Assembly: GCF_022045235.1 (NCBI RefSeq)
Contig: NW_027266270.1
Location: 29,636,001-29,700,000, forward strand
Reading direction: 5' to 3'
Length of the DNA stretch: 64,000 bases
DNA from: Haliotis cracherodii
Taxonomy: Eukaryota
The notes below the pieces were generated by a model. It was not told where the DNA came from, searched no databases, and was given only the letters and a program-made list of their open reading frames with translations. Both the position numbers and the translations under genes were made by a program. Positions 688 through 43,330 of this stretch are shown here, piece after piece (position 1 is the first letter of the stretch; every line of letters begins with the position of its first letter).

Positions 688-755
688 CTTGAGAACAGTT
701 CACTTGTTAATGGTTCTCAGGTAGAAGGAGACTCAACGAATGAGATGTGCTCACT

Positions 756-3700
756 TACTTACTTACTTACTTACTTTGGAGATTTAACGTGCGCTTTCCG
801 ACTGATGCGTATTTCGCACACGGGCCCGGCCAGGCCATTTAATGTGTTTCCGAAAGGGGCGAGGGTGGTCTGTGCAACCCAAGAGGGGGCTTTAGGGGTT
901 GCTTATATAGAATTTGGGAATTTTGAGATTTGGAATAGATGCTGATGGGGTTGGGGAGGAGAACTAAGGGAGCTGGGTATGGTGGATGATTGTTTGTTTA
1001 TGTGATTTTGATTTGGTAGGTTATTATGGTTTTAGATGCGTTTTATTAGTTCCGTTTTTATTAAGAATACGCCTAAGGCCTTGAAGTTTTCTAGTTTATT
1101 TTGTGGGTTTAGTATTGCTTCTAGAGTGAGAGCCTTGTTTAGATTGAGGGTGGTTTGTAATGCGGTTCGATGTGTTAGGTAGTGTGTGCAGTGGATGAGT
1201 GCGTGTTCTGGGGTTTCTGGTTGTTTGCAGTGTGGGCAGTTACCTGTAGTGTGTTTTTTAAATTTTTTTAGGTGGTTATTTAGGTTGGTGTGTCCTGTTT
1301 GGAGTTTAGTGATTACTCTGTCGATTTTTTTTGATGGATGGAGAATTTTTGGTTTGGTTAGTGGTTTGCTGAGCACTCTTTTGATTTTGCTATTTGAGTT
1401 TAGATATAGGTTATGCCATTTTTTTGTGATTTTTTGTTTGTTTACACTTTTAATTTCTGTTTTTGAGATGGGTAAGTTTAAGCTTATTTCTGGGATTTTA
1501 AGGGATAGTTTAGCTGCTTTATCGGCGTTTTCATTACCGTATATTCCTACGTGGGCGGGTATCCACAAGAAGGTTATTTGTTTGCCTGCTTTTGTTAGGT
1601 CGTTGGAGCTTTTAAGTATTTGATTTATTAATTTAGGTCGGTTTTTGGTATTTTTGTTTTGGAGGGCTTGTAGTCCACTTAGGGAGTCAGTAAGTATTAG
1701 GATTTTTTGGTTGTTTTTGGATTCTTGATTGTGGAGGGCTGAGGCCATGCCCATTAGTTCGGCCGTGAATATTGATTGGTTATTTGGGAGTCGGAAGGAT
1801 TGTGTGGTTTTAGTTGGTTGTGTGGTATGGACTCCGAAACCCGTGTGTTTGGAGGTCGGATCTGAGGATCCGTCCGTGTAAATGTGACACCAATTTGGCC
1901 AATTTTTGTGTATGTATGCTAGTGTGGTAGTTTTAGCTATGTTTGGGTCGGTTTGTTTATTTATTTGGCTAGCTAGTGTTGTGTCTATTTTGGGTATTTT
2001 AAGTTTAGGGGTGAAGATATTTGATTGTTTGCAGTTTTGTTTAAGATTTTTAATTTGGTGTTCATTTAGGTAGTTTGTTATTCTTTGGGATATTGGGGTA
2101 AGTAAGGGGTGTTTACGAGCTAGAGCTTGGTTTTTAGGGCTGATGTTTTGGTTTATTAAGTTTTGGATGAGAGGGTTTGATTGGGACGCGGCCCAGAAAT
2201 TTAAGCTTAGCTGTTCCCTGCGTAGACTTAGTGGCATTTCTCCTGTTAAGGCCTGAAGTGAGGTGTAGGAGGTGCCATGTTGGGTGCGTGTAATGAGTTT
2301 GAGAGCCTGATATTGTATTGAGTCAAGTTTTTTGGATAGAGAGTTGTTTAGGGTGTTGTATATGGCGCAGCCGTAGTCTAGTTTTGATCTAATTAGGGAT
2401 ATGTAGAGAGAGAGGAGAGTATCTTTGGAGGCTCCCCAGTTAGAGCCAGTTAGGCATCTTAGGGTGTTTAGGTCTTTACTGCATTTAGTTGTTAGGTTTT
2501 GGATGTGAGCATCCCAGGTGAGATGTTCATCGAAAATAAGTCCTAAGAATTTGGTTTGTTTTTGAAATTTGATTGTTTGGTTGTTTAGCTGGAGGATTGG
2601 GGAGGCGGGTTTCATGTTTTTATGTTTGAATACTATTCCTGTTGTTTTTTCTGAGTTAAGGGAGAAGCCCCATTTGTCAGCCCATTGTTGTATTTTATTA
2701 AGAGATTTTTGGAGTAGATTTGTGGCCATTTTCATGCTTTTAGTGCGGATCCAGATGGCTCCATCATCCGCGAATTTTGATGTGTTTACTTTAGGGGATA
2801 GACCCTCGAATAGATCGTTTATCATTATATTGAAGAGGGTGGGGCTGAGGATACTGCCCTGTGGAGTGCCATTTTCTAGGGGACATTGGTCCGATAGAGT
2901 TTGGTCTATACACACGGTTATTTTACGATTGTTTAGGAAGTCCTGGATGTAGTTTATTATCTGACCTTTGAGTCCTATTTTTTTAAGTTTTTGTATTAGC
3001 CCATCGTGCCATACCATGTCGAAAGCTTTAGAGAAGTCTAAGAAGATGCCTGTGGTATATTGTTTATTTAGTTGTCCTGTCTTAATATCTTGTTCTAGTC
3101 GGGCGAGGTTATCTAGGGTTGAGCGGCCAGGAGTGAAACCGCTTTGATCTGGGTTTATGGTGTTATTTTGGGTTAAGTAATGTTGTAATCTATTTTTAAC
3201 CATTGATTCCATTACTTTACATAAGTTTGAAGTTAGGGATATTGGTCTATATGAGTTAGCTTGATTAGCTGGTTTATTAGGTTTAGGGATTGGTATGACT
3301 AGGGCCTGTTTCCAGGGTGTAGGAACCTGTCCGTTTAGGTAGATGAGATTGTATAGTTTGAGTAGTGCCTGGAGCAGTTTTAGGGGGAGTTTTTTAATTA
3401 TTTGGTAAGAGGTTAGGTCTAATCCTGGGGCTGTGCCCTTTTTCCTGTTTTGGATTACGTAGAGGAGCTCCTCCATTGTGTAGGGTTGATTTATTTCTAG
3501 ATTGTTATTGTTTGGTTCTTTTGTGGGTTTGTTTTCTGTTTTAAGTTTATCTTGGAATTTTTGGCTGAAGTTGCTGTTACTGCTAACGGCCGAAAAGTGG
3601 TTGGCGAGATTATTTGCTTTTTGGGCGGGGTTGGTTGAGTTGTTAATGTTAGGTTTTTTTTTATGTCGTTTTAAGCCTCTAATGGCGTGGATTTTGCGCC

Positions 3701-4703
3701 AGACCGTTCTGGCATCTGTACGGTTATTTATACCTTCGCAGAATTTTTTCCAGTCTCTACTTTTGGCTATTTGGACTAGTTTTTGAACCTGGTGGTTTAG
3801 TTCGTGGGCTATGTTTAAATATTTGTAGTCGCGTTTTGCTTTATTGAAGGCTGATTTACGTTTTCGTCTAGTCTGTTCTATTTCCTCATTCCACCATGGT
3901 ACCGTCGGTTTGCCTGTCTTAGATACTTTGAAGGGGATGGAGGTTTTGGCTGCGTTTATTATATAGTCTGTTAGGTTTTTACAATAGGTTTCTGGATCAT
4001 TATTTTCTATTTCGTTTAAGTTAGCTTCGTTGCAGATATCTTGGAATTGGTCCCAGTTAGCTTTGTTGTAATGGAATTTTGGTTCTTGGTTTTCTGTTTG
4101 GATTGGTACGTTTGTATTTCCTATGGTTATGTTTATGGGGAAGTGGTCGCTACCTAGCGGGACGTCGTGCACTTCCCATTGAGTGCTTTGGGCTAGATCT
4201 GCGGTGCATATGGTTAGGTCGATAGCCGACATTTTTTGGTTTATCTTATCGTACCTCGTGGGTTGGTTGCTATTAAGGAGTACTAGGTCGTTTGTTTCTA
4301 TCCATTCGGAGATTAATTTGCCATGAGTATCTATTTTATCATCTATGCTCCATGTAGGATGGTGAGCGTTAAAGTCTCCTAGGAATATAGTAGATTTATC
4401 GCTTATTTTGAGTAGTTTGTTTAGATCCTCAGGTTGGACTTTTTGTTCCGCCCAGTGGTAAATATTTATGATGTTTATGTTTCGGTTATTTAATGTGATT
4501 TTAATGCCGTTGGCTTCTAGGTTTGGCGTGTCTATTTTTATTTCTTCGTAATTTATATCTTCCCTGATAAATATGATTAGTCCTCCTGCGGCTCTTCTTG
4601 TTTTCGGTTTAGCTCTGTCAGTTCTAACTGAGTTGTAGTTAGGTAGTGTGAATTTCGATTTTTTTGAGAATTTGGTTTCCTGTATACAAGCAATGTGAGG
4701 GCC
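756..4703 (-). mobile_element. I-group non-LTR retrotransposon (subfamily A1), 5'-truncated, inserted at the copy-1 core promoter
   Basis: (TAAG)n 3' tail at ~756-775. TSD ATGTGCTCACT at 745-755 and 4704-4714. Near-identical to the element at 37141-42944. Confidence 0.95.
1032..4703 (-). CDS. LINE ORF2 (APE endonuclease, RT, RNase H, CCHC), open from the truncation point and lacking the first ~29 codons
   Basis: GDFNAH and SDHFPI (APE); YRPISL, QSGF, PQGSILSP, FADD (RT); YTDGS, TAEL, TDSLS, WIPAHVGIYGNENAD (RNase H); CPHCKQPETPEHALIHC. Confidence 0.93.
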   Translation of the reverse strand, partial: GPHIACIQETKFSKKSKFTLPNYNSVRTDRAKPKTRRAAGGLIIFIREDINYEEIKIDTPNLEANGIKITLNNRNINIINIYHWAEQKVQPEDLNKLLKISDKSTIFLGDFNAHHPTWSIDDKIDTHGKLISEWIETNDLVLLNSNQPTRYDKINQKMSAIDLTICTADLAQSTQWEVHDVPLGSDHFPINITIGNTNVPIQTENQEPKFHYNKANWDQFQDICNEANLNEIENNDPETYCKNLTDYIINAAKTSIPFKVSKTGKPTVPWWNEEIEQTRRKRKSAFNKAKRDYKYLNIAHELNHQVQKLVQIAKSRDWKKFCEGINNRTDARTVWRKIHAIRGLKRHKKKPNINNSTNPAQKANNLANHFSAVSSNSNFSQKFQDKLKTENKPTKEPNNNNLEINQPYTMEELLYVIQNRKKGTAPGLDLTSYQIIKKLPLKLLQALLKLYNLIYLNGQVPTPWKQALVIPIPKPNKPANQANSYRPISLTSNLCKVMESMVKNRLQHYLTQNNTINPDQSGFTPGRSTLDNLARLEQDIKTGQLNKQYTTGIFLDFSKAFDMVWHDGLIQKLKKIGLKGQIINYIQDFLNNRKITVCIDQTLSDQCPLENGTPQGSILSPTLFNIMINDLFEGLSPKVNTSKFADDGAIWIRTKSMKMATNLLQKSLNKIQQWADKWGFSLNSEKTTGIVFKHKNMKPASPILQLNNQTIKFQKQTKFLGLIFDEHLTWDAHIQNLTTKCSKDLNTLRCLTGSNWGASKDTLLSLYISLIRSKLDYGCAIYNTLNNSLSKKLDSIQYQALKLITRTQHGTSYTSLQALTGEMPLSLRREQLSLNFWAASQSNPLIQNLINQNISPKNQALARKHPLLTPISQRITNYLNEHQIKNLKQNCKQSNIFTPKLKIPKIDTTLASQINKQTDPNIAKTTTLAYIHKNWPNWCHIYTDGSSDPTSKHTGFGVHTTQPTKTTQSFRLPNNQSIFTAELMGMASALHNQESKNNQKILILTDSLSGLQALQNKNTKNRPKLINQILKSSNDLTKAGKQITFLWIPAHVGIYGNENADKAAKLSLKIPEISLNLPISKTEIKSVNKQKITKKWHNLYLNSNSKIKRVLSKPLTKPKILHPSKKIDRVITKLQTGHTNLNNHLKKFKKHTTGNCPHCKQPETPEHALIHCTHYLTHRTALQTTLNLNKALTLEAILNPQNKLENFKALGVFLIKTELIKRI

Positions 4704-4727
4704 ATGTGCTCACTACCATCCGTAGAG

Positions 4728-4980
4728 TTTTATACCCTACCCACCACTATGGGTTCATCGCCTTCGATCTATTGGCTGGAAGTACTCTTTGATCCCTGGC
4801 TTCTATTAGATAGTTATTTATTCTTTGATCTATGGTTTCACAAGCCCGTGTTTTTATAGCATTGTATAAACAGTGCCAACTGACTAATCTCCTCTACACC
4901 ATGAAGCCAATAAGCTGATTGGAATTAGGATTGGCCTCTAGATTGGTACTTGCTTTGATTACATTTAAGGATGATTGGGA
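4728..4980 (-). promoter_or_regulatory. Displaced promoter of homeobox copy 1 (TATA, CCAAT boxes, TCF-like sites)
   Basis: TATAAAA at 4734-4728; CCAAT boxes at 4771, 4907, 4918, 4930, 4942, 4974; CTTTGAT at 4787, 4823, 4953. Homologous to the upstream regions of the array copies. Confidence 0.65.
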
Positions 4981-4999
4981 TGTTTGGACAGTCGAGTCC

Positions 5000-6360: not shown

Positions 6361-6399
6361 TGTTTGGTATTTTCCACGGGATATTTTTGTCACTCTGAA

Positions 6400-7560: not shown

Positions 7561-7687
7561 ATATTAGTCCAACCCATGTACAATTTGCAGGGGAAGAAAT
7601 GAAAACCTCGTGACCATGATACCCTGTTAGAGATTACAGTCGAGTCTGTGAGTCCAATCCGCCCTACGCGAGTACATAGTGAAAGAG

Positions 7688-7973
7688 TTGAGGTGAGGTG
7701 AGGTGAAATGGGGTTTAACGTCGGGTCCAAGATTATTGCACATATATAGCGACGTGCATGCACGTGTATGTGTGTGTATGGCTGCTTGTACTAGACACAG
7801 TATACTGACTCTGAGCCGACCAGTCCTTGTTTTAGCCCCTTAATGCCGATCGTCAGACAGGGTAACAACAAGTACCATCTTTAAACGACTTTTGGTATGA
7901 CGAGGCCGGGGATCGAACCCCGGACCATCCGTTCTCTGGGCGGATGCTCTACCACTAGATCACGGAGACGGGT
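7688..7973 (-). mobile_element. tRNA-derived SINE
   Basis: Reverse-strand A box (TAGTGGTAGAG) and B box (GGTTCGATCCC), with a (CACCT)n tail. Confidence 0.65.
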
Positions 7974-9384: not shown

Positions 9385-9541
9385 TTGGATAGTCAAGTGG
9401 CAATATGTGCGCTTGTCAGGCTGACGCCTCGGGTTCTATTCCCCGCAGGGATACAATGTGTTGAACGGATTTCTGGCGTCCCAGCTGGGGTATTGCTGGA
9501 ATATTGTTACAATCGGCTTGACTCCTTTTTCACTCACTCAC
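9385..9541 (+). mobile_element. tRNA-derived SINE family 1 (diverged)
   Basis: Similar to 51372-51536: GGTTCTATTCCC B-box variant, TTGCTGGAATATTG motif, (CACT)n tail. Confidence 0.65.
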
Positions 9542-12304: not shown

Positions 12305-13660
12305 TCACAACTGGAATATGCCAGACAGGAACTCCTCACAATGCTTGGAAGCAACTACGGCTTTGGCAGATCGGGGTCTCCTGGTCCTGTGTCTCTTATT
12401 TGCAAACCACTTTCGGAGCTGAGAAAGTGTGATGCCTCCCTTGTTGGCCATGTCCTCAGCTTCTGTATGAGTTGGGTAGGGGTTGTTGAGATGCTCATGG
12501 TACCACGATTCCATCAAGGTGATGGATTCAGGATTGAGGTTTCTGCTGGCAGGACGGGACAGCTTCTTGTTTTGATTTTCTAGATTGTTAAGACTTCTCT
12601 CGATGCTGGTGAAGACCAGGTGGAGCTGGTCAGTATATGTGTTGGTCAGCCAGTTGTGGTAGTCCGTGGGAAAGAAACCATCTTGAAGACACTGTTCATG
12701 CTCCTTCTGAATAGATGACGAATGGAAGGCAAGGAAGCTGGATAGTTCTTTAACCTCTGCTGGGAACCTTGACTGGAGTGACTGAAGTCTATTCTCAAGA
12801 GCTGACTGACGATCGGAGGAAAGGCAGTTGGTAGTCTTCATTGTTGAAACTCTATCAAGTGTTTTTGAGATGATGTCATCAACAGCTTTACCAATGTCCG
12901 GTCTGGGGGAAGACGGCAGCTTGAGGTCAAGTGGTCGCGTCTCTGTGACAGGGTTGATGTCCATACATTTTGAATGTGGGCGAGTGGCAACTGATATTTG
13001 CGTTGGTGTAGACAGGGCAGGGGTGTTTGGAATCGATACTGGATGGATGGGCGGAATTGTTGGACTAGAAATCGTCCCCGTTTTGCTGGAAGGTAATAAG
13101 GATGGACTCAATGGTGCACTGGAAAACCCCAACGACTGGGCTGGAAGAAAGCATGGACTTGGTGGCAGGAATGCTGGACTCGGTGGTAGGGTGTAGCTGG
13201 AAGGCATGTAGGAGCCTGGTCTGAAGCTGGAAGTGTAGTACCTGGTGGAGCAGGGAGGGAAGAAACTGTAGGGGCTGGAGAAGCAGGTTGCCTGGAGGTA
13301 GGTGGGAGATGCCATCGGGTGGAGGCTTGAGAGAGTTGGTACATGGTGGTGGGTGTCAGCAACTGGCAGTGTGAGGGATGGCACACAACGTCTCTTGGGC
13401 AGAGGAGTTGATGTGTGCTGAGGTGCCCCTGCAATAAAGGAAATATTGTATAACATACTCAGGGTAAGCAATGGCATGGATACGGCATAGACATTACCCA
13501 ATGGCACTTTGAATAAGAAGGACTTGAACAATGAGGAGATCTCACTCATTTTATTCCATCTATAGATTAGAACTTGATACTAGAACACTATGTGGAAGGA
13601 CTTACCAATACCAGAATTGACGTGAAAGGAATCATCAACAGGAGTTTTCAAGTCAGCCAT
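12305..13660 (-). CDS. TALE-class homeobox protein, array copy 2 (392 aa): exon 1 13606-13660, exon 2 12305-13428
   Basis: Homeodomain with three-residue loop extension: LMESWYHEHLNNPYPT...QLRKWFANKRHR. A phase-1 GT..AG intron (13429-13605) joins MADLKTPVDDSFHVNSGIG to APQHTSTP in frame. Pro/Ser-rich N-terminal half. Confidence 0.9.
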
Positions 13661-13724
13661 CTTTGATTTTAGGAACGTTCACTTGTTCAAGGTTTTGAGG
13701 TAGCTGGGTATCAACAGACTCAAC

Positions 13725-14230
13725 AAGTGAGATGTGCTCACCTTCCAACTGTGGAGTTTTATGCTCTACTCACCTCTCTGGCGTCATCATCTTCAACCCC
13801 ATTGGCTGTAAGGACTCTTTGATCCATGGCTTCTTTTTGAACATTTAACTTTCTTTGATCTAGGGTTTCACTAACCAATTGCTTACTCTTTCTTTATAAC
13901 ACCAAGCCAATCAGCTAATTGGAATTAAGTTTGGCCTCTTGATTCGTCTTTGCCTTATCAACATTCAAGGATGACGAGATTATCGAGTTTTGATAGACGG
14001 TCCTTGAGTGTGTACATGACGGAAAGCGGTTGATGGGGGTTTCATTGGTTTCATTGATCTCTGGCTTCTTTAACGCTGTGTTCCCTTTATGTTTGATTGG
14101 CTCTGGTGTCTTTCGTGATACTGGTTAGTGTTTTGATAGCGTTAAACAAACATTTTCCTTTGGCGGGATTTCCTGATTGACGTATCTTTCTTTGATTTTC
14201 TCTGACACAAACCAATTAGTTTATTGGATT
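13725..14230 (-). promoter_or_regulatory. Predicted homeobox promoter (Inr-like TCACTT, CATAAAA box, CCAAT cluster, TCF-like sites), repeated in each unit
   Basis: CATAAAA at 13763-13757; CCAAT at 13801, 13875, 13907, 13918, ~14044, ~14096, ~14212, ~14223; CTTTGAT at 13817, 13853, 14190. Confidence 0.65.
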
Positions 14231-14411
14231 GATTGTTTCGACTACAAGTTGGGTTTTTCACATTAACGAATGATAATGATGTTTCGTACTACTATCTTAA
14301 GCAGCTGAACGCAACGTTAAATTACACCCAGACTACACTCTGCGGAGTTGTGGGTAGAATATTTGCATAGCAAGCATAGTACATTATAAACAATATTGTA
14401 GTCAATGCGTA

Positions 14412-31059: not shown

Positions 31060-32263
31060 TCACAACTGGAATATGCCAGACAGGAACTCCTCACAATGCT
31101 TGGAAGCAACTACGGCTTTGGCAGATCGGGGTCTCCTGGTCCTGTGTCTCTTATTTGCAAACCACTTTCGGAGCTGAGAAAGTGTGATGCCTCCCTTGTT
31201 GGCCATGTCCTCAGCTTCTGTATGAGTTGGGTAGGGGTTGTTGAGATGCTCATGGTACCACGATTCCATCAAGGTGATGGATTCAGGATTGAGGTTTCTG
31301 CTGGCAGGACGGGACAGCTTCTTGTTTTGATTTTCTAGATTGTTAAGACTTCTCTCGATGCTGGTGAAAACCAGGTGGAGCTGGTCAGTATATGTGTTGG
31401 TCAGCCAGTTGTGGTAGTCCGTGGGAAAGAAACCATCTTGAAGACACTGTTCATGCTCCTTCTGAATAGATGACGAATGGAAGGCAAGGAAGCTGGATAG
31501 TTCTTTAACCTCTGCTGGGAACCTTGACTGGAGTGACTGAAGTCTATTCTCAAGAGCTGACTGACGATCGGAGGAAAGGCAGTTGGTAGTCTTCATTGTT
31601 GAAACTCTATCAAGTGTTTTTGAGATGATGTCATCAACAGCTTTACCAATGTCCGGTCTGGGGGAAGACGGCAGCTTGAGGTCAAGTGGTCGCGTCTCTG
31701 TGACAGGGTTGATGTCCATACATTTTGAATGTGGGCGAGTGGCAACTGATATTTGCGTTGGTGTAGACAGGGCAGGGGTGTTTGGAATCGATACTGGATG
31801 GATGGGCGGAATTGTTGGACTAGAAATCGTCCCCGTTTTGCTGGAAGGTAAGAAGGATGGACTCAATGGTGCACTGGAAAACCCCAACGACTGGGCTGGA
31901 AGAAAGCATGGACTTGGTGGCAGGAATGCTGGACTCGGTGGTAGGGTGCAGCTGGAAGGCATATAGGAGCCTGGTCTGAAGCTGGAAGTGTAGTACCTGG
32001 TGGAGCAGGGAGGGAAGAAACTGTAGGGGCTGGAGAAGCAGGTTGCCTGGAGGTAGGTGGGAGATGCTATCGGGTGGAGGCTTGAGAGAGTTGGTACATG
32101 GTGGTGGGTGTCAGCAACTGGCAGTGTGAGGGATGGCACACCACGTCTCTTGGGCAGAGGAGTTGATGTGTGCTGAGGTGCTCCAGAACACTATGTGGAA
32201 TGACTTACCAATACTAGAATTGACGTGAAAGGAATCATCAACAGGAGTTTTCAAGTCAGCCAT
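31060..32263 (-). pseudogene. TALE homeobox copy 6, probable pseudogene
   Basis: The intron is reduced to 25 nt (32184-32208) and has lost its acceptor, so read-through frameshifts. The promoter is separated from the gene by 10.6 kb of LINEs. Exon 2 is still open. Confidence 0.8.
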
Positions 32264-32344
32264 CTTGGATTTGAAGAACGGTTTGTTCAAGGTTCTGAGG
32301 TAGCTGTGTATCAACAGACTCAACAAGTGAGATGTGCTCACCTT

Positions 32345-33328
32345 ACTTACTTACTTACTTACTTACTTTGGAGATTTAACGTGTGCTTTCCGACAGGTGC
32401 GTATTTCGCACACGGGCCCGCCCAGGCCATTTAATGTGTTTCCGAAAGGGGCGAAAGTGGTGTGTGCAACCCAAGAGTGGGCTTTAGGGTTTGCTTATAT
32501 AGAATTTGGGAAGTTTTTGAGATTTGGAATAGATGCCGATGGAGTTGGGGAGGAGAACTAAGGGAGCTGGGTAGGGTAGATGTTTGTTTGTTTATGTGAT
32601 TTTGATTTGGTAGGTTATTGTGTTTTTAGATGCGTTTTCCGTTTTGATTAAGAATACGCCTAAGGCCTTGAAGTTTTCTAGTTTATTTTGTGGGTTTAGT
32701 ATTGCTTCTAGAGTGAGAGCCTTGTTTAGATTGAGGGTGGTTTGTAATGCGGTTCGATGTGTTAGGTAGTGTGTGCAGTGGATGAGTGCGTGTTCTTGGG
32801 TTTCTAGTTGTTTGCAGTGTGGGCAGTTACCTGTAGTGTGATTTTTTAAATTTTTTTAGGTGGTTATTTAGGTTGGTGTGTCCTGTTTGGAGTTTAGTGA
32901 TTACTCTGTCGATTTTTTTTGATTGATGTAGAATTTTTGGTTTGGTTAGTGGTTTGCTGAGCACTCTTTTGATTTGGCTATTTGAGTTTAGATATAGGCT
33001 ATGCCATTTTTGTGATTTTTTGCTTGTTTACACTTTTAATTTCTGATTTTGAGATGGGTAAGTTTAAGCTTATTTCTAGGATTTTGAGGGATAGTTTAGC
33101 TGCTTTATCGGCGTTTTCATTACCGTATATTCCTACGTGGGCGGGTATCCACAAGAAGGTTATTTGTTTGCCTGCCTTACACTAAATGGTCTGGCCAGGC
33201 CCGTGTGCGAAATTCGCTACAGTCGGAAAGCGCACGTTAAATCTTCTATATCAGTCAGTCAGTCAGGGTATCTTTGGAGGCTCCCCAGTTAGAGCCAATT
33301 AGGCATCTTAGGGTGTTTAGGTCTGTAC
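32345..33328 (-). mobile_element. I-group LINE (subfamily A2), 5'-truncated and internally deleted; first member of the stack
   Basis: (TAAG)n tail abuts TGCTCACCTT (32335-32344), which recurs at 33329-33338. About 825 bp are deleted internally and replaced by a foreign fragment. Confidence 0.9.
33180..33266 (+). mobile_element. 3' terminus of a third related LINE family or LINE-tailed SINE, with a (TCAG)4 tail
   Basis: AAATGGTCTGGCCAGGCCCGTGTGCG...CAGTCGGAAAGCGCACGTTAAATCT matches the A/B 3' motif but with distinct variants and a different tail; opposite orientation. Confidence 0.8.
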
Positions 33329-33338
33329 TGCTCACCTT

Positions 33339-36300
33339 ACTTACTTACTTATATTGGAGATTTAACGTGCGCTTTCCGACTGCAAGCGTATGTCGCACAC
33401 GGGCCCGGCCAGGCCATTTAATGTGTTTCCAAAAAGGGGAAAAGTGAGTTTGTGCAACCCAGGAGGGGGGCTTTAGGGGTTGCTTATATAGTAATTTTGA
33501 AATTTTGAGATTTGGAAAGAATGCCAAGAGTGGGTGGGGGACGAACTAAGGGAGCTGTGTGTGTTGGGTGGTTATTAAATAAGGTAGTTTTGGTTTTAAT
33601 ATTTTATTTGGTGTTTAAATGCGGCTAATTAGTCCCGTTTTTATTAGGTATATGCCTAAGGCTTTGAATTTTTCTAATTTATTTTGTGGATTTAGGATTG
33701 ATTCTAGTGTAAGTCCGGTTTTAAGATTTAGGGTGGTCTGTAGTGTTGTTCGGTGTGTTTGGTAGTGTGTGCAGTGAATGAGTACGTGTTCTGGTGTTTC
33801 TTGTTGTTTGCAATGTGGACAGTTTCCTGTTTTGTGTAGATTAGCTATTTAACGGTGATTATTTAGTTTGGTATGGTCTGTTTGTAGTTTGGTAATTATT
33901 TTGTCGATTTGTTTGGATGGGTGTAGTATTTTGGGTTTATTTAGGGTTTTTTTGAGTACTTTCCTGATTTGGCTATTTGAGTTTTGGTATATATTTTGCG
34001 ATTTTTTGTTGATTTTTTGTTTAGTGACACTTTTGATTTCTGATTTTGAGCTGGGTAAGTTTAAGCTTATTTCTGGGAGTTTAAGGGATAATTTTGCTGC
34101 TTTATCTGCCTTTTCATTGCCAAAGATTCCTACGTGGGCGGGGATCCAAATGAAATTTATTTGTTTACCTAACTTAGTTAAGTTGTTTGAGCTATTGAGT
34201 ATTTGATTTATTAGTTTGGGGCGGTTTTTAGTGTTTTTATTTTTGAGGGCTTGTAGTCCACTGAGGGAGTCGGTTAGGATGAGGATTTTTTGGTGTTTTT
34301 TAGATTGCTGATTGTGTAGTGCTGAGGCAATGCCCATTAGTTCGACCGTGAATATGGATTGGTTGTTTGGGAGTCGGTAAGATTGTGTGTCTTTGGTTGG
34401 TTGTGGGATGTGGACTCCGAAACCTGTGTGTTTTGAGATCGGATCTGAGGATCCGTCTGTGTATATGTGACACCAATTTGGCCAATTTTCATGTATGTAT
34501 GCTAGTGTGGTGGTTTTAGCGATGTTAGGATCGGTCTGTTTATTTAGTGTATCGGCTAGTGTTGTGTCTATTTTTGGTATTTTAAGTTTTGGAGTGAAGA
34601 TATTGGATGATTTATTGTTTTGTTTAAGATTATTTATTTTGTGTTCATTTAGGTAATTGGTTATTCTTTGGGAAATTGGAGTAAGTAGTGGATGTTTCCG
34701 GGCTAGGGCTTGGTTTCTAGGGCTAATATTTTTTTTTATTAAGTTTTGGATGAGAGGGTTTGATTGGGACGCGGCCCAGAAGTTTAGGGTAAGTTGTTCC
34801 CTACGTAGTTTAAGTGGCATTTCTACTGTTAAGGCCTGGAGTGAGGTGGAGGAGGTGCCATGTTGAGTTCGTGTGATTAGTTTGAGGGGCCTGATACTGG
34901 ATTGAGTCTAGTTTTTTAATGAGAGAGTTGTTTAAGGTGTCGTAAATGGCACTGCCATAGTCTAGTTTGGATCTAATTAGTGATATATAGAGTGAGAGGA
35001 GAGTGTTTTTAGAGGCCCCCCAGTTGGAGCCGGTAAGGCATCTTAACGTGTTTAGGTCTTTGCTGCATCTGGTTACAAGGTTTTTAATGTGAGCATCCCA
35101 GGTGAGATGTTCATCGAAGATTAATCCTAAGAATTTGGTTTGTTTTTGGAATTTGATTGGTTTGTTGTTTAGTCGGAGGTTTAGGGAGGCGGGTTGCTTA
35201 TTTTTGTGTTTAAATACTATTCCTGTGGTTTTTTCTGAGTTTAGGGAGAAGCCCCATTTGTCAGCCCATTTTTGTATTTTATTTAGAGATTTTTGTAGTA
35301 AGTTTTGGGCCATTTTAATGCTTTTAGTGCGGATCCAGAGGGCTCCATCATCCGCGAATTTTGATGTGTTTACTTTGGGGGATAGTCCCTCGAATAGATC
35401 GTTAATCATAATATTGAAGAGTGTTGGGCTTAGGATACTGCCCTGGGGAGTGCCATTTTCTAGGGGACATTGGTCCGATAGCGTTTGGTCTATGCCCACG
35501 GTGATTTTGTGGTTTGTTAGGAAACTTTGGATGTAGTTAATTATTTGACCTTTAAGACATATTTTTGAAGTTTTTGTATTAGCCCGTTATGCCAAACCAT
35601 GTCGAATGCTTTGGAGAAGCCTAGAAAGATAACTGTAGTATATTGTTTGTTAAGTTGGCCTGTTTTAATGTCCTGCTCTAGTCGGGCGAGGTTATCTAAG
35701 GTTGAGCGTCCAGGAGTGAAACCGCTTTGGTCTGGATTTATTATGTTGTTTTGTTCTAAGTAGTGTTGTAACCTGTTTTTTGCCATTGATTCCATTACTT
35801 TGCATAAGTTAGAAGTTAGGGAGATTGGTCTGTATGAATTAGCCTGGTCAGCTGGTCTATTGGGTTTGGGGATTGGTATGACCAGGGCTTGTTTCCAAGG
35901 TGATGGGACCTGTCCGTTTAGATATATGAGGTTATAGAGTTTCAGAAGAGTTTGGAGTAGTTTGGGTGGTAATTGTTTAATTATCTGGTATGAAGTAAGC
36001 CTGGGGCTGTGCCCTTTTTCCTATTTTGTAGGACGTGGAGTAGTTCTTCCATTGTGAAATGGAGATTAATTTCTAGGTTATTATCTTTTGGCTCTTTGGT
36101 AAATTTGGTTTCTGATTTTAGTTGTTCCTGGAATTTTTGATTGAAGTTGCTATTCCTACTGACGGCCGAGAAGTGATTTGCTAGGTTATTAGCTTTTTCA
36201 GTGGGGTTTGTTGAATTGTTTATGTTGGGAGTTTTTTTTATGACGTTTAATGCCCCTATTGGCGTGGATTTTGCGCCAAACTGTTCTGGCGTCTGTATGA

Positions 36301-37128
36301 TGGTTAATTTCTTCGCAAAAAATTTTCCAGTCTCTTGTTTTAGCTGTTTTAACTAAGCTTTGTACTTTGTGATTTAGTTCACGTGCTATCTTTGGGTGTT
36401 TGAAGTCACGTTTGGCTTTATTGAATGCGGATTTGCTTTAACGCCTAGTTTGTTCTATCTCCCCGTTCCACCAAGGAACCGAGGGTTTGCCTATGCTGGT
36501 TATTTTGAAAGGAATGGAGTTTTTAGCTGCGTTTATCATGCAGTCAGTGGGGTTTTTGCAGTAGATTTCGGGGTCGTTACTTTCTAGGTCAGCTAGGTTA
36601 GCCTGGTTGCAAATTTCCTGAAATTTGTCCCAGTCGGCTTTGTTGAAGTGGAATTTAGGTTCCTGGTTTGGGGCTGGTGTTGGGATGTTTACGTCTCCTG
36701 TAGTTATATTTATGGGGAAGTGGTCACTACCTAGTGGTACCCCGTGTACTTCCCATTGAATACTTTGGGCTAAATCTGGGGTGCATATGGTTAAGTCGAT
36801 AGCCGACATTTTGTGGTGTATTTTGTCGTATCTAGTAGGTTGGTTGTTATTTATTAGTATTAGGTCATTTTGTTCTATGCATTCTGAGATGAGTTTTCCG
36901 TGTTTATCTATTTTATCTTCTATACCCCAGGTAGGGTGGTGGGCATTAAAGTCTCCTAGGAAGATTGTAGATTTATTGCCTATTTGGTGGAGGGTGTTTA
37001 AATCCTCAGGTTTGACCTGTTTTTCTACCCAGTGGTATATATTTATGATATTAATTTTTTGGTTGCTATTTGTTATTTGGATACTGTTTGCTTCTAGGTT
37101 TGGTGTGTTTATTTTTAGTTCTTTGTTC
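33339..37128 (-). mobile_element. I-group LINE subfamily B (clearly diverged from A), 5'-truncated in the APE domain, multiply frameshifted; second member of the stack
   Basis: ORF2 fragments at 36438-37130, 35541-35795, 34810-35499 and 33849-34820 carry the same APE/RT/RNase H motifs. (AAGT)n tail. Flanked by ACTGCTCACCTT at 33327-33338 and 37129-37140. Confidence 0.93.
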
Positions 37129-37411
37129 ACTGCTCACCTTACTTACTTACTTACTTTGGAGATTTAACGTGCGCTTTCCGACTGATGAGTATTTCGCACA
37201 CGGGCCCGGCCAGGCCATTTAATGTGTTTCCGAAAGGGGCGAGGGTGGTCTGTGCAACCCAAGAGGGGGCTTTAGGGGTTGCTTATATAGAATTTTGGAA
37301 TTTTGAGATTTGGAATAGATGCCGATGGGGTTGGGGAGGAGAACTAAGGGAGCTGGGTATGGTGGATGATTGTTTGTTTATGTGATTTTGATTTGGTAGG
37401 TTATTATGGTT

Positions 37412-40400
37412 TTAGATGCGTTTTATTAGTTCCGTTTTGATTAAGAATACGCCTAAGGCCTTGAAGTTTTCTAGTTTATTTTGTGGGTTTAGTATTGCTT
37501 CTAGAGTGAGAGCCTTGTTTAGATTGAGGGTGGTTTGTAATGCGGTTCGATGTGTTAGGTAGTGTGTGCAGTGGATGAGTGCGTGTTCTGGTGTTTCTGG
37601 TTGTTTGCAGTGTGGGCAGTTACCTGTAGTGTGTTTTTTAAAAAAATTTAGGTGGTTATTTAGGTTGGTGTGTCCTGTTTGGAGTTTAGTGATTACTCTG
37701 TCGATTTTTTTTGATGGATGTAGAATTTTTGGTTTGGTTAGTGGTTTGCTGAGCACTCTTTTGATTTGGCTATTTGAGTTTAGATATAGGCTATGCCATT
37801 TTTGTGATTTTTTGTTTGTTTACACTTTTAATTTCTGATTTTGAGATGGGTAAGTTTAAGCTTATTTCTGGGATTTTGAGGGATAGTTTAGCTGCTTTAT
37901 CGGCGTTTTCATTACCGTATATTCCTACGTGGGCGGGTATCCACAAGAAGGTTATTTGTTTGCCTGCCTTAGTTAGGTCGTTGGAGCTTTTAAGTATTTG
38001 ATTTATTAATTTAGGTCGGTTTTTGGTATTTTTGTTTTGGAGGGCTTGCAGTCTACTTAGGGAGTCAGTAAGTATTAAGATTTTTTTGTGGTTTTTGGAT
38101 TCTTGATTGTGGAGGGCTGAGGCCATGCCCATTAGTTCTGCCGTGAATATTGATTGGTTATTTGGGAGTCGGAAGGATTGTGTGGTTTTAGTTGGTTGTG
38201 TGGTATGGACTCCGAAACCTGTGTGTTTGGAGGTCGGATCTGAGGATCCGTCCGTGTAAATGTGACACCAATTTGGCCAATTTTTGTGTATGTATGCTAG
38301 TGTGGTAGTTTTAGCTATGTTTGGGTCGGTTTGTTTATTTATTTGGCTAGCTAGTGTTGTGTCTATTTTGGGTATTTTAAGTTTAGGGGTGAAGATATTT
38401 GATTGTTTGCAGTTTTGTTTAAGATTTTTAATTTGGTGTTCATTTAGGTAGTTTGTTATTCTTTGGGATATTGGGGTAAGTAAGGGGTGTTTACGAGCTA
38501 GAGCTTGGTTTTTGGGGCTGATGTTTTGGTTTATTAAGTTTTGGATGAGAGGGTTTGATTGGGACGCGGCCCAGAAATTTAAGCTTAGCTGTTCCCTGCG
38601 TAGACTTAGTGGCATTTCTCCTGTTAGGGCCTGAAGTGAGGTGTAGGAGGTGCCATGTTGGGTGCGTGTAATGAGTTTGAGAGCCTGATATTGTATTGAG
38701 TCACGTTTTTTAGATAGAGAGTTGTTTAGGGTGTTGTATATGGCGCAGCCGTAGTCTAGTTTTGATCTAATTAGTGATATGTAGAGAGAGAGGAGAGTAT
38801 CTTTGGAGGCTCCCCAGTTAGAGCCAGGTAGGCATCTTAGGGTGTTTAGGTCTTTACTGCATTTAGTTGTTAGGTTTTGGATGTGAGCATCCCAGGTGAG
38901 ATGTTCATCGAAAATAAGTCCTAAGAATTTGGTTTGTTTTTGAAATTTGATTGTTTGATTGTTTAGCTGGAGGATTGGGGAGGCGGGTTTCATGTTTTTA
39001 TGTTTGAATACTATTCCTGTTTTTTTTTTCTGAGTTAAGGGAGAAGCCCCATTTGTCAGCCCATTGTTGTATTTTATTAGAGATTTTTGGAGTAGATTTT
39101 TGGCCATTTTCATGCTTTTAGTGCGGATCCAGATGGCTCCATCATCCGCGTATTTTGATGTGTTTACTTTAGGGGATAGACCCTCGAATAGATCGTTTAT
39201 CATTATATTGAAGAGGGTGGGGCTGAGGATACTGCCCTGGGGAGTGCCATTTTCTAGGGGACATTGGTCCGATAGAGTTTGGTCTATACCCACGGTTATT
39301 TTACGATTGTTTAGGAAGTCCTGGATGTAGTTTATTATCTGACCTTTGAGTCCTATTTTTTTAAGTTTTTGTATTAGCCCATCGTGCCATACCATGTCAT
39401 AAGCTTCAGAGAAGTCTAAGAAGATGCCAGTGGTATATTGTTTATTTAGTTGTCCTGTCTTAATATCTTGTTCTAGTCGGGCGAGGTTATCTAGGGTTGA
39501 GCGGCCAGGAGTGAAACCGCTTTGATCTGGGTTTATGATGTTATTTTGGATTAAGTAATGTTGTAATCTATTTTTAGCCATTGATTCTATTACTTTACAT
39601 AAGTTTGAAGTTAGGGATATTGGTCTATATGAGTTAGCTTGATTAGCTGGTTTATTAGGTTTAGGGATTGGTATGACTAGGGCCTGTTTCCAGGGAGTAG
39701 GAACCTGTCCGTTTAGGTAGATGAGATTGTATAGTTTGAGTAGTGCCTGGAGTAGTTTTAGGGGGAGTTTTTTAATTATTTGGTAAGAGGTTAGGTCTAA
39801 TCCTGGGGCTGTGCCCTTTTTCCTGTTTTGGATTACGTAGAGGAGCTCCTCCATTGTATAGGGTTGATTTATTTCTAGATTGTTAATGTTTGGTTCTTTT
39901 GTGGGTTTGTTTTCTGTTTTAAGTTTATCTTGGAATTTTTGGCTGAAGTTGCTGTTACTGCTAACGGCCGAAAAGTGGTTGGCGAGATTATTTGCTTTTT
40001 GGGCGGGGTTGGTTGAGTTGTTAATGTTAGGGTTTTTTTATGTCGTTTTAAGCCTCTAATGGCGTGGATTTTGCGCCAGACCGTTCTGGCATCTGTACGG
40101 TTATTTATACCTTCGCAGAATTTTTTCCAGTCTCTACTTTTGGCTATTTGGACTAGTTTTTGAACCTGGTGGTTTAGTTCGTGGGCTATATTTAAATATT
40201 TGTAGTCGCGTTTTGCTTTATTGAAGGCTGATTTACGTTTTCGTCTAGTCTGTTCTATTTCCTCATTCCACCATGGTACCGTCGGTTTGCCTGTCTTAGA
40301 TGTTTTGAAAGGGATGGAGGTTTTGGCTGCGTTTATTATATAGTCTGTTAGGTTTTTACAATAGGTTTCTGGATCATTATTTTCTATTTCGTTTAAGTTA

Positions 40401-41167
40401 GCTGCGTTGCAGATATCTTGGAATTGGTCCCAGTTAGCTTTATTGTAATGGAATTTTGGTTCTTGGTTTTCTGTTTGGATTGGTACGTTTGTATTTCCTA
40501 TGGCTATGTTTATGGGGAAGTGGTCACTACCTAGCGGGACGTCGTGCACTTCCCATTGAGTGCTTTGGGCTAGATCTGCGGTGCATATGGTTAGGTCGAT
40601 AGCTGACATTTTTTGGTTTATCTTATCGTACCTCGTGGGTTGGTTGCTATTAAGGAGTACTAGGTCGTTTGTTTCTATCCATTCGGAGATTAATTTGCCA
40701 TGATTATCTATTTTATCATCTATGCTCCATGTAGGATGTTGAGCGTTAAAGTCTCCTAGGAATATAGTAGATTTATCGCTTATTTTGAGTAGATTGTTTA
40801 GATCCTCAGGTTGGACTTTTTGTTCCGCCCAGTGGTAAATATTTATGATGTTTATGTTTCGGTTATTTAATGTGATTTTAATGCCGTTGGCTTCTAGGTT
40901 TGGCGTGTCTATTTTTATTTCTTCGTAATTTATATCTTCCCTGATAAATATGATTAGTCCTCCTGCAGCTCTTCTTGTTTTCGGTTTAGCTCTGTCAGTT
41001 CTAACTGAGTTGTAGTTAAGTAGTGTGAATTTCGATTTTTTTGAGAATTTGGTTTCCTGTAAACAAGCTATGTGAGGGCCTTTATTTAGTTTAAATTTAG
41101 TTTTTAGTTCATGGCCGTGGGAGGTGAGTCCGTTGGCGTTCCACTGAAAAATATTTAGTCCTTCCAT
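37412..41167 (-). CDS. LINE ORF2 (APE-RT-RNase H-CCHC) with several homopolymer frameshifts
   Basis: Begins MEGLNIFQWNANGL...ACLQET (APE N-terminus); ORF pieces at 39875-41167, 37791-39854 and 37412-37756. Breaks fall in A/T runs and may be real or sequencing errors. Confidence 0.88.
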
Positions 41168-41210
41168 TATTGGTTTCGGGTGATTGGTGATTTAGTTTTT
41201 AGTTTTTATT

Positions 41211-42853
41211 TTATTCGGTGAGTTCTTTTAGATGGAGGTTAAAGAGGAAGAAGGGAAGATCGGTTAATTTTAGATTGAAAGCTACTTTGTGGAAGGATTC
41301 CATACTAGCTTTTGGTGAGTTTTGACTATGCATGTATGCTAGGAGTAAGGTGAGGTTATTTAGGTTTGGGCTGTTGGCTGGTTGGGAAGTTTGGTTTGTT
41401 TTAGTTGGAGTAGTGTCTATTGTTTCCTCAGTAGTGGAGAAATCTTCGTCATTGGTTGGATTAGGTTTAGCTGGTTGAGTTTCCATGGGGGAGGCATGTG
41501 ATGTGGAGGGTTGTGAAGGTGTTGGCGGGATGGGTGTAGCTGATGTTTTCTTAGTGTTTGTGTTTTGTTGTTGTGCTTGCTTGTGGGAGAGTGTTGTTGC
41601 CATATGGGCTGTAGGGTGCTTGGATGAGGGTCGTGTTGTGGTGGTCATTTTGAGGTTTGTTTTGCATGCGGGGGTTGATGTTTTGGCTATGTGAGATGTG
41701 GGAGGGTTTGTGGTTGGTTGAGTGGCTGCTTGTGTGTGTGAGGTGGGTGCGGTTTCTCGGTAGGGGTCCCAGACAGAGCTGTCGGTTATGGGTGTGGTGT
41801 TTGTTTGTGGGATGGTGTTTGGGTGTGGTGTAGGGAGGAGTGGTTTAGATGCAGGTGTAGCAAATTTTCGTGTTTGGATTTTAGCCGTTTCTATGTTTAT
41901 GTGTTTGTTGACCTGCTGGGAAAGTGTGTGTCTGTGTGGGCATTGGTTTGAAAGTGAGGTGTGTTGGGTGGATTTGCAGTGGATGCACCAGGGTGTGCAT
42001 GTGCCTGGGCAGTCTGTTTGTGCGCATTTTTTATACATTTAGTTTTAGGGTATGTGCATTGGGAAGCATTGTGGTTGTATTTGAGGCACTTTGAACATTG
42101 CTTAACCTGCTTTATATAGGGTTTGACTTCTAAGTTGGTGTGGGCTCCGAAGGATATGTGTTTGGGGGCTTCAGGGAATTTAGCGGGTTTTTTAAAGTTG
42201 ATTATGACAATGGAGGTTGGGACCGTTTTTCCGTTTCTAGTTGAGGTTATTCTGCGCGTGCTGGTGATTAGGGGTTGAGGGTTTTGGTCTTGGTTTATGT
42301 TAGCTTCTAGAGAGTATAATTGTAAGTCCTCAGTTGTTTCCCTTGGGTTAACCCTAATTACGCCTCGTGTATATTGTTGCCAATTAGGTGTTTGTTTGAT
42401 TACCGTGACGTGGAATATTTGAGTTATTTTATTTGCTGCGTTGTAAGATTCTCGGTTAGGAAAGATTATCTGGTATCCTTTGTTGGCTTTTTTAATATTG
42501 TTGTAATTTATTTTTTGTCTTTTGAACCAAAGTCCTATTTTATCTGCCGAAAGGTCTAGTGAGAGAGTGGTGCCTGAGCCTGCTGAGAAGAAGTAGAGGG
42601 CGAAGGTGGTGAGGAAGGCGGCCGGGGAGGGTGTTGGCGATGGAGGTGGAGTGGATGTGTCGAGTTTGCGTTTTTTGGTGTTTTGTGGTGGCGAGTTAGC
42701 TGGTTTGGTTGGGGTGGTGTATGTCGTGTTTTCGCCATACTCGGTCGGGACGATGTTTTCGAGTGACCTCCCAGAAGTGTTGTGCGCTTCCGCAGGCGTG
42801 GGTGAGTAAGGAGCTGGAATGTCTGCGAGTGTGGCGTTGCGGGTGTCAGTCAT
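41211..42853 (-). CDS. LINE ORF1 gag-like protein with zinc knuckles (one frameshift in an A-run near 42030)
   Basis: CSKCLKYNHNASQC (CX2CX4HX4C) followed by further Cys/His clusters (CIHCKSTQHTSLSNQC); Thr/Pro-rich tail. Confidence 0.85.
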
Positions 42854-42944
42854 ATTGTTTGGGTGTTGTGTTGGAGAGCGTGTGTTGTGGTAAGTGGTGG
42901 TGGAGTGTTTTGGGGAGGTGAGTTGGTTTGTTGTTTTTACTTGG

Positions 42945-43330
42945 ACTGCTCACCTTCCATTTGTGGAGTTTTATGCTCTACTAACTTCTTTCGCTTCATC
43001 ACCTTAAACCTCATTGGCTGTAAGGACTCTTTGATCCATGGCTTCTATTTGAACATTTAACTTTCTTTGATCTAGGGTTTCACTAACCAATTAACTACTT
43101 TTTCTTAACAACATCAATCCAATCAGCTGATTGGAATTTCAGCGATCTCTGGCTTCTTTAACACTGCGCTCCCTTTATGTTTGATTGGCTCTGGTTTCTT
43201 TCATGTCTCGTGTCATTGGTTAGTGTTTTGACAGCGTTAAACAAACAGTATCCATTGGCGGGATATTCCTGATTAGCTTATCTTTCTTTGATTTTCTCTT
43301 TTACAAACCAATCAGTTTATTGGATTGTTT
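42945..43330 (-). promoter_or_regulatory. Original promoter of homeobox copy 6, now directly upstream of the full-length LINE
   Basis: Homologous to 13741-14230. CATAAAA at 42975-42969, CCAAT at 43013, CTTTGAT at 43029, 43065 and 43286. Confidence 0.75.

What the first reader, a model, noticed from the sequence alone, without database searches (positions are those of the whole stretch)
745..42975. Candidate new system: RNase H-bearing LINEs that repeatedly target the transcription start of a TALE homeobox gene family
Seen in sequence: four of the five TSD-flanked I-group LINE insertions (756-4703, 32345-33328, 33339-37128, 37141-42944) lie at the homologous GTGAGCA position of the homeobox promoter, between the TATA-like box and the Inr-like TCA(C/T)T. 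All four have the same orientation as the gene. They come from at least three distinguishable lineages (A1, A2 and the much more diverged B) and hit two diverged paralogs. The empty site is preserved in copies 2-5 (e.g. 13735-13744). Established knowledge: site-specific non-LTR elements typically target rDNA (R1/R2), telomeric repeats (SART/TRAS), snRNA/tRNA genes or microsatellites, and position-specific targeting near Pol III genes is known for Ty3 and Dictyostelium TRE elements. I am not aware of a LINE specific for the Pol II start site of a developmental gene family. Inference: a multicopy early-embryonic homeobox array serves as both a buffered niche and a promoter source.
Basis: partly seen in the sequence, partly recalled or inferred. 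Interest (0 to 1): 0.95.

Follow-up and report, generated by a model that had tools for sequence, protein, structure and literature searches.

The report
LINEs that land behind TATA boxes
The four stacked jumping-gene insertions at the abalone homeobox promoters are real, but the element is not aimed at these genes: genome-wide it cuts about 14 bases downstream of any TATA-box-like sequence, an unusual targeting rule that puts each new copy where transcription would start.

Summary
Observation confirmed. Four independent LINE insertions (APE + RT + RNase H) sit at the same nucleotide of two diverged TALE homeobox promoters, in gene orientation, between the TATA-like box and the conserved start region.

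The interpretation of a homeobox-specific LINE is not supported. The main lineage has 1628 exact 3' ends on all chromosomes. Thirty sampled copies have 30 different flanks. Only the four window copies abut this promoter.

What explains the hits is a general rule. In 23 non-redundant reconstructed empty sites, an oriented TATA-like box lies 13-15 bp upstream of the first nick (A/T 87% against 60%, z about 7.6). A genome-wide spacing test peaks sharply (44 of 69 sites in 4 of 30 allowed gaps, P about 4e-22). The reverse-complement box is almost absent (2 against 98). With 7-13 bp duplications, the LINE 5' end lies about 31-32 bp from the first T of the box, the usual TATA-to-start distance.

Insertion leaves the box and spacing intact, so sites are reused. 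The same head-to-tail stacks occur at unrelated loci. The copy-1 insertion is absent from two other individuals, so it is recent.

Whether the box is read by the LINE itself (about 50%) or through TBP or the pre-initiation complex (about 35%) is open.

Earlier scan notes cover only this same window.

The parts
755..4703 (-). LINE copy (main lineage A1), 5'-truncated in the APE domain, with an intact 1066-aa RT-RNase H reading frame and an (AAGT)n tail at 755-777. Inserted in the promoter of homeobox paralog 'copy 1'.
   Evidence: Junctions read. 98.25% identical to the long copy. Pfam RVT_1 and RNase_H. Absent (empty allele) in contigs of runs X5, X7 and X10.
745..754 (-). Downstream copy of the 10-bp target-site duplication GTGAGCACAT of the copy-1 insertion. 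The upstream copy is at 4704-4713.
4728..4734 (-). TATAAAA box of the copy-1 promoter, 14 bp upstream of the first nick (between 4714 and 4713).
   Evidence: geometry
1..744 (-). 5' UTR, exon 1, intron and start of exon 2 of the diverged TALE homeobox paralog (copy 1).
12305..13549 (-). Homeobox copy 2 (414-aa reading frame with a Homeobox_KN domain). Near-identical copies lie at 18083-19327, 22417-23661 and 26732-27976. All have empty target sites.
   Evidence: 98% identical to a Haliotis cracherodii protein.
13732..13763 (-). Empty target in copy 2: CATAAAA box (13757-13763), a 15-bp spacer, then GTGAGCACAT (13732-13741).
   Evidence: alignment A1
14412..15847 (+). Fifth LINE (A1, 5'-truncated) in the spacer between copies 2 and 3. 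TSD TCAATGCGTA at 14402-14411 and 15848-15857. TTATAAA box at 14384-14390, 11 bp upstream of the nick.
31060..32334 (-). Homeobox copy 6 downstream of the stack. About 175 bp of its intron, including the 3' splice site, is deleted, so it is probably a damaged gene.
32345..33328 (-). E3, the oldest member of the stack. A rearranged LINE fragment carrying an inverted 85-bp 3' end of lineage B at 33179-33263.
33339..37128 (-). E2, the second insertion. Distinct lineage (82% identity, tail AATAT(AAGT)n), 5'-truncated in APE.
37141..42944 (-). The youngest and longest copy (ORF1 + APE + RT + RNase H, with frameshifts). It lacks at least about 450 bp of 5' UTR.
42945..42975 (-). Copy-6 promoter core: CATAAAA box (42969-42975), a 15-bp spacer, then the promoter-proximal TSD copy GTGAGCA+GT (42945-42953).

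Best explanation
A young, active, dispersed group of LINEs (lineages A1, A2 and B, sharing a 3' UTR; ORF1 + APE + RT + RNase H) chooses its targets by a two-part rule.

The rule:
- An oriented TATA-box-like heptamer (about TATAWAW) lies on the element's sense strand.
- The first (bottom-strand) nick falls 13-15 bp after the box.
- The second nick falls 7-13 bp further on.
- The 5' end of every new copy therefore lies about 31-32 bp from the first T of the box.

The abalone TALE homeobox promoters carry such a box at the right place. That is why four insertions hit the same nucleotide in gene orientation.

The insertion leaves the box, the spacer and the upstream TSD copy intact. The site stays usable, and later copies stack on the promoter-proximal side.

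Shown here: the rule, its orientation, the site reuse and the recency of the insertions.

Inferred: who reads the box. I commit to the LINE's own ribonucleoprotein reading the box or its DNA shape directly (about 50%). The main alternative is docking on host TBP or the pre-initiation complex (about 35%). The rule itself I hold at about 0.85-0.9.
For: - Dispersal: 1628 exact 3' ends, and 30 different flanks in 30 copies.
- Box position: 25 reconstructed empty sites show A/T of 83-96% at -20..-15 against about 60% elsewhere. z = 7.3-8.4, and 0 of 200000 resamplings reach the observed value.
- Motif: TATAWAW with at most 1 mismatch starts at -24..-18 in 12 of 23 sites, against 4.3% of control windows. 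The median start is -21.
- Spacing census: TATAWAW, a gap of 5-34, then the LINE segment gives 189 matches. Among 69 unique sites, 44 fall in 4 adjacent gap values (P = 4e-22). Gaps of 35-64 give only 42 matches, mostly longer copies.
- Orientation: 98 forward against 2 reverse-complement boxes.
- Reuse elsewhere: L015 (A1-TSD-B) and L061 (A2-TSD-B-TSD-A1).
- Independent hits at one position of repeat R1: about 200 of 3577 copies, with different truncation points.
- Stack order: the TSDs of the two later window insertions include 2 nt of E3.
- The fifth window LINE obeys the rule.
- For a direct read: many targets are ordinary or repeat DNA. No tRNA or Rfam gene lies nearby.
Against: - The window -20..-15 was chosen after looking at the data. 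The effect is far larger than any correction for that, and the pattern census is a second, separate sample.
- The census counts only copies truncated at one point, and it required a perfect box.
- About 15% of sites (L050, L058, L025) have no recognisable box.
- Occupancy is very uneven (about 1e-3 on average, 5-6% at R1, 2 of 7 here). No further conserved position explains this, which a simple sequence reader does not predict.
- ORF2 starts directly with the APE domain and has no obvious extra DNA-binding domain.
- The box matches the TBP consensus, and the geometry matches TATA-to-start spacing. Both favour the host-factor alternative.
Confidence: 0.5

Rival explanations
1. The same rule applies, but the box is read through the host. 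The LINE ribonucleoprotein docks on TBP (TFIID/TFIIB, or a TBP-containing Pol III factor) bound to a TATA box. It nicks the template strand at about -10 and the coding strand at about +1 of the start site that the box specifies. Active TATA promoters in germline or early embryo are then the hottest sites, and each new copy inherits a host promoter.
For: - The motif equals the TBP consensus and is strictly oriented.
- The nick is at about +21 and the 5' junction at about +31/32 from the first T. This is the canonical TATA-to-start distance (established knowledge).
- Occupancy is very uneven without extra sequence signal.
- A bona fide promoter (CCAAT boxes, TATA, conserved start block, ATG about 70 bp on) was hit four times.
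- Precedents exist. Ty3 integrase uses TFIIIB, which contains TBP. TRE5-A is a LINE guided by the Pol III complex. DGLT-A uses its RNase H domain to contact TFIIIC (PMC6101501; titles).
Against: - Most sampled targets are not evident promoters.
- The hottest class, R1, forms inverted-repeat arms rather than an LTR or a gene promoter.
- No expression, TBP or start-site data are available.
- Host tethering is rare among LINEs (prior knowledge).
Confidence: 0.35
2. One reading: a LINE family that specifically recognises the start region (GTGAGCA) of this TALE homeobox family.
For: Four hits at one nucleotide in two paralogs, from three lineages.
Against: - There are 1628 + 412 copies elsewhere, with no GTGAGCA in 30 sampled flanks.
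- Only six LINE tail+GTGAGCA junctions exist genome-wide, and two of them are at unrelated loci.
- Positions around the nick carry almost no information.
- Five of the seven promoters are empty.
Confidence: 0.03
3. There is no sequence rule. The promoter is simply open or fragile chromatin, or the later copies were drawn to the (AAGT)n tail of the first one by microhomology.
For: The tail ends AAG/AAGT next to a target reading AAG|GT or TA|GT. Promoters are accessible.
Against: - Every junction in the stack keeps a full TSD copy rather than lying inside a tail, and new copies went upstream of the older ones.
- There is no AAGT preference at -4..-1 in 23 sites.
- Open chromatin cannot give single-nucleotide precision or the fixed box spacing seen at unrelated sites.
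Confidence: 0.04
4. The copies derive from one insertion spread by segmental duplication or gene conversion.
For: The genes form a recently homogenised tandem array.
Against: - The 5' truncation points, lineages and TSD lengths differ (7, 9, 9 and 10 bp).
- The copy-1 insertion is absent in other individuals.
Confidence: 0.01

Closest known systems
Ty3 (yeast LTR retrotransposon) and TRE5-A / DGLT-A (Dictyostelium) position-specific integration
   Same: Integration occurs at a fixed distance from a core promoter element, in a defined position relative to a transcription start. Ty3 uses TFIIIB, which contains TBP. TRE5-A is a LINE. DGLT-A uses its RNase H domain for tethering (PMC6101501; PMC5911963 listed).
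   Different: Those elements target Pol III genes (tRNA). Here no tRNA or small-RNA gene lies near 49 and 20 sampled sites respectively. The landmark is a Pol II-type TATA box, and host-factor dependence is untested.
Sequence-specific APE-type LINEs (R1, TRAS/SART, Waldo/Mino microsatellite elements, Tx1-group snRNA/tRNA elements)
   Same: APE-type LINE with precise, reproducible nick positions and head-to-tail reuse of one site.
   Different: Those elements have nearly all copies in one repeated target sequence recognised around the nick. Here the copies are dispersed, the sequence at the nick is nearly free, and the only strong signal is a short box 14-21 bp away.
I / Nimb-like LINEs (APE + RT + RNase H, ORF1 with zinc knuckles)
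   Same: Domain order and content, CCHC-like motifs in ORF1, simple-repeat tail, 5' truncation, variable TSD. Relatives at 37-47% identity occur in molluscs and fish.
   Different: Clade placement was not tested, because no reference set was at hand. I know of no report of a TATA-box-linked target rule for these clades, and three full-text searches found none.
Drosophila gypsy/297-type LTR elements with TATA/ATAT target motifs; Tf1 at Pol II promoters
   Same: Preference for TATA-like sequence or for Pol II promoters (PMC3276498).
   Different: Those integrases cut inside a palindromic 4-bp TATA/ATAT motif, which becomes the TSD. Here the box is outside the TSD, oriented, and at a fixed distance, and integration is by target-primed reverse transcription.

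Membership tests
APE-type non-LTR retrotransposon (LINE) with RNase H | Apurinic-endonuclease-like domain, reverse transcriptase and RNase H in ORF2 | tested here: met
   Exo_endo_phos_2 3e-19, RVT_1 6.8e-48, RNase_H 3.1e-18
APE-type non-LTR retrotransposon (LINE) with RNase H | Variable 5' truncation, variable-length TSDs, simple-repeat 3' tail | tested here: met
   Truncation points and 6-13 bp TSDs. (AAGT)n or (TCAG)n tails.
I / Nimb clade | Phylogenetic placement of RT among reference clades | not tested
   No reference RT set was available. Only architecture and unnamed relatives were seen.
Site-specific LINE (one target sequence) | Most copies lie in the same target sequence | tested here: not met
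   30 of 30 sampled copies have different flanks. Only 4 of at least 1628 lie at the homeobox site.
Transcription-complex-guided, position-specific retrotransposon (Ty3 / TRE5-A type) | Fixed distance and orientation relative to a core promoter element | tested here: met
   Box at -21 (range -22 to -16), sharp gap peak, 98:2 orientation
Transcription-complex-guided, position-specific retrotransposon (Ty3 / TRE5-A type) | Physical dependence on a host transcription factor | not testable with these tools
   Needs binding or nicking assays, or TBP occupancy maps.
Transcription-complex-guided, position-specific retrotransposon (Ty3 / TRE5-A type) | Targets are Pol III genes | tested here: not met
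   No tRNA in 49 loci. No Rfam family in 20 loci.
TALE-class homeobox gene (possibly spiralian SPILE group) | TALE homeodomain | tested here: met
   Homeobox_KN 2.2e-12
TALE-class homeobox gene (possibly spiralian SPILE group) | SPILE clade membership and cleavage-stage expression | not tested
   Close relatives occur only in Haliotis. No RNA run holds the gene. SPILE arrays in abalone and zygotic onset at 4-16 cells are from PMC8524836.

The most novel reading that the evidence does not exclude
These LINEs are guided by the Pol II initiation machinery. Their RNP docks on TBP or the pre-initiation complex at a TATA box and cuts at the two edges of the future transcription bubble (about -10 and +1). 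Every new copy, even a truncated one, is thus delivered with its first nucleotide at the start site of a host TATA promoter. This would be the first Pol II promoter-guided target-primed reverse transcription. It would also make early-embryo promoter arrays such as this homeobox cluster natural hot spots.
Probability: 0.35. Interest if true: 0.92.

Novelty: new variant of a known kind. Interest (0 to 1): 0.75.

Why it matters
LINE target choice is usually described in one of three ways: a short motif at the nick (L1), a single repeated target (R1, R2, telomeric elements), or tethering to Pol III genes (TRE5-A). An active LINE group that measures a fixed distance from an oriented TATA-like box is a different solution.

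- It places the 5' end of each copy where a TATA box directs initiation. This suggests a way for 5'-truncated or promoter-less copies to be transcribed.
- It predicts recurrent, oriented mutagenesis of TATA-containing promoters. Here that means a lineage-specific homeobox array in an endangered abalone, with one insertion still polymorphic.
- It offers a natural 'ruler' system for studying how a TPRT machine can be positioned. This is of interest for retroelement-based gene insertion.
- It explains why head-to-tail LINE stacks separated by TSD copies arise.

Tried and rejected
- **Homeobox-specific targeting:** rejected.
- **GTGAGCA as part of the element (5' or 3' transduction):** rejected. 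Truncated copies also carry it, and genome-wide copies do not.
- **Tail-directed stacking:** rejected.
- **A second conserved downstream motif** (TCACTTG/TTGA is shared by R1 and the promoter): not supported by the position table of 23 sites.
- **R1 as an LTR promoter:** rejected. Homology ends about 90 bp after the nick, but the arms occur as inverted pairs.
- **More genomic copies:** I did not try to get those letters another way. I used only counts and the rows that the pattern tool prints.
- **Expression and start-site mapping:** no RNA run holds the gene.
- **Literature:** three full-text searches found no LINE with a TATA-linked target rule.


Full report
**What is in the window.** The window is G000:C7:29636001-29700000 of a 1.18-Gb animal genome. 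The homeobox protein is 98% identical to a Haliotis cracherodii protein, and close relatives exist only in Haliotis, so the host is an abalone. On the minus strand lie four near-identical TALE homeobox genes (414-aa frames, Homeobox_KN). There is also a fifth copy with a deleted intron (copy 6) and the 5' part of a diverged paralog (copy 1). A seventh paralog lies 33 kb to the left. Only these seven promoters exist in the genome.

I read every junction.
- In copy 1, a LINE (755-4703) is flanked by a 10-bp duplication, GTGAGCACAT.
- In copy 6, three LINEs lie head to tail, each separated by GTGAGCA.
- BLAST against the long copy shows four different 5' truncation points and identities of 98%, 82% and 96%.
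- The domains are APE, RT and RNase H.
- The insertions lie 14-15 bp downstream of a (C/T)ATAAAA box. They lie just upstream of a block, GTGAGCACATCTCAYT.GTTGAGTCT, that is invariant among paralogs otherwise about 74% alike.
- The two later members of the stack have 9-bp duplications that include two bases of the first-inserted fragment. The true LINE 5' sequence starts after those bases.
- The insertion order was therefore gene-proximal first, and each new copy used the promoter-proximal site.

**The element is not specific for these genes.**
- The 160-bp 3' UTR has at least 855 candidate matches. The 40 that were scored are all 100% identical and lie on chromosomes C1-C5.
- The 30-nt 3' end occurs 1628 times, and that of a sister lineage 412 times.
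- Thirty fetched copies have thirty different 3' flanks.
- The tail followed by GTGAGCA occurs ten times in the genome. Four are the window sites, two are LINEs at unrelated loci, and four are not LINEs.

**What the sites share.**
- I rebuilt 25 empty sites from copies with both junctions (22 genome-wide and 3 from the window).
- Duplications are 6-13 bp, and the bases at the nick are nearly free.
- Positions -20 to -15 relative to the first nick are 83-96% A/T, against about 60% elsewhere. z is 7.3 even without the window sites, and no resampling of 200000 reaches the observed value.
- A TATAWAW match (at most 1 mismatch) starts at -24..-18 in 12 of 23 non-redundant sites, against 4.3% of control windows. 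The median start is -21.
- The position window was chosen after seeing the data, so I made a second test on other copies. Many copies are truncated about 63 nt from the 3' end.
- The pattern 'TATAWAW, gap 5-34, that LINE segment' has 189 matches. Among 69 unique sites in the listed rows, 44 fall in four adjacent gap values and 34 fall in two (P about 4e-22 and 6e-22).
- Gaps of 35-64 give 42 matches, mostly longer copies that again carry a box at the corresponding distance from their own 5' end.
- The asymmetric form TATAAAW occurs 98 times at the peak gaps. Its reverse complement occurs twice, and both of those also contain the forward box.
- The rule is therefore: oriented box, 13-15 bp, first nick, 7-13 bp, second nick. 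The LINE 5' end lies about 31-32 bp from the first T of the box.
- The homeobox promoters fit exactly: nick after position 21 or 22, and LINE start at position 32.
- The fifth LINE of the window also has a box, 11 bp before its nick.

**Reuse of sites is general.**
- Locus L015 has an A1 copy, a 13-bp duplication, a 63-bp B fragment, and the duplication again.
- L061 has A2, B and A1 copies separated by the same 12-bp duplication. L028 looks alike.
- An abundant repeat, R1, has 3577 copies of its core. It carries a LINE at one and the same position, 12-13 bp after a TATATATA run, in roughly 200 copies, with different truncation points.
- At that occupancy (5-6%), two hits among seven homeobox promoters would not be extraordinary (P about 0.055).
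- Against the roughly 1.9 million perfect boxes extrapolated for the genome, both R1 and the promoter are far hotter than average.
- I found no further conserved position that explains this. R1 is not an LTR. This remains unexplained.

**Activity.** Contigs of two runs of the same species from other studies join window position 744 directly to 4704, with 0-2 mismatches. This is the empty allele of copy 1. A related species also shows the empty site (table 8). The copy-1 insertion is therefore polymorphic and recent. No RNA run holds the homeobox gene, so the start site, the embryonic expression and any transcription of the LINEs from the host box are untested. SPILE-type TALE arrays in abalone, and their zygotic onset at the 4-16-cell stage in other molluscs, are reported in PMC8524836. 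Membership of this gene in that group was not tested.

**Mechanism.**
- Shown: the bipartite, oriented rule; target-primed insertion with short duplications; preservation of the box, and hence stacking.
- Inferred: - For direct reading by the LINE ribonucleoprotein (about 50%): LINE specificity is usually self-encoded, and many targets are ordinary or repeat DNA without tRNA or Rfam genes.
- For docking on TBP or the initiation complex (about 35%): the motif is the TBP consensus, it is oriented, the cuts fall at about -10 and +1 of the start that the box would specify, hotness is uneven without sequence cause, and a real promoter was hit four times. Ty3, TRE5-A and DGLT-A are precedents at Pol III genes.
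- The rest of the probability goes to other causes and to the rejected models.

**Comparison and novelty.**
- By architecture this is an ordinary I/Nimb-like LINE with relatives in molluscs and fish. Its clade was not tested.
- It fails the test for a site-specific LINE.
- It works like a position-specific element, with a Pol II-type TATA box as landmark.
- I know of no LINE with such a rule, and three full-text searches found none.
- Drosophila LTR elements that cut inside TATA/ATAT motifs are a different case.
- I rate it a new variant of a known kind.

**Limits.** The census therefore rests on 25 curated sites, plus pattern counts and the rows that the tool prints. I tallied the gap values by hand from the first 100 rows, collapsing duplicates and one repeat family.

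Noticed in passing
window 31060-32344 (minus): Homeobox copy 6, the one carrying the three-LINE stack, has lost about 175 bp of its intron including the 3' splice site. It is probably a damaged gene.
   Followed up: partly
window 33179-33263: Inside the oldest stack member lies an inverted 85-bp 3' end of lineage B with a (TCAG)n tail. About 820 bp of LINE is missing next to it, so this is a rearranged copy.
   Followed up: partly
genome-wide; e.g. L054, L056, B fragments in L015 and L061: Many copies are 5'-truncated at one point about 63 nt from the 3' end (start near CCGTGTGCG). This may be a reverse-transcription stop at a 3' UTR structure.
   Followed up: no
genome-wide rows: At least 40 copies of a repeat ('S') end in TATAAATAAATGAATTRCATT...CTTAAY joined to that same 63-nt LINE tail. 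It may be a SINE-like composite mobilised by this LINE.
   Followed up: no
L009, L013, L026, L030, L051, L057, L061 and 3577 genomic sites: Repeat R1 (core TTGCTTGAYAAMGGTRTWAG) is preceded by ATTGG/CCAAT-like motifs and a TATATATA run. It is often found as inverted pairs or 40/153-bp tandems. It is the commonest landing site of the LINE.
   Followed up: partly
window 48252-49499 (+): A 415-aa reading frame with a GHL10 glycoside-hydrolase-like domain (1.2e-54), a family typical of bacteria, next to the array.
   Followed up: no
L045 = G000:C7:29601330-29604572: A seventh homeobox paralog (86% promoter identity) in opposite orientation, 33 kb left of the window, with an empty target and a TATATAAAA box.
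   Followed up: partly
L064:1-545: A genomic copy extends at least about 450 bp further 5' than the window's longest copy. The extension is an A/C-rich, internally repetitive 5' UTR.
   Followed up: partly
window 13732-13756 and homologous places (alignment A1): The block GTGAGCACATCTCAYT.GTTGAGTCT is invariant in all diverged paralogs. It is probably the core promoter or start of the 5' UTR.
   Followed up: no
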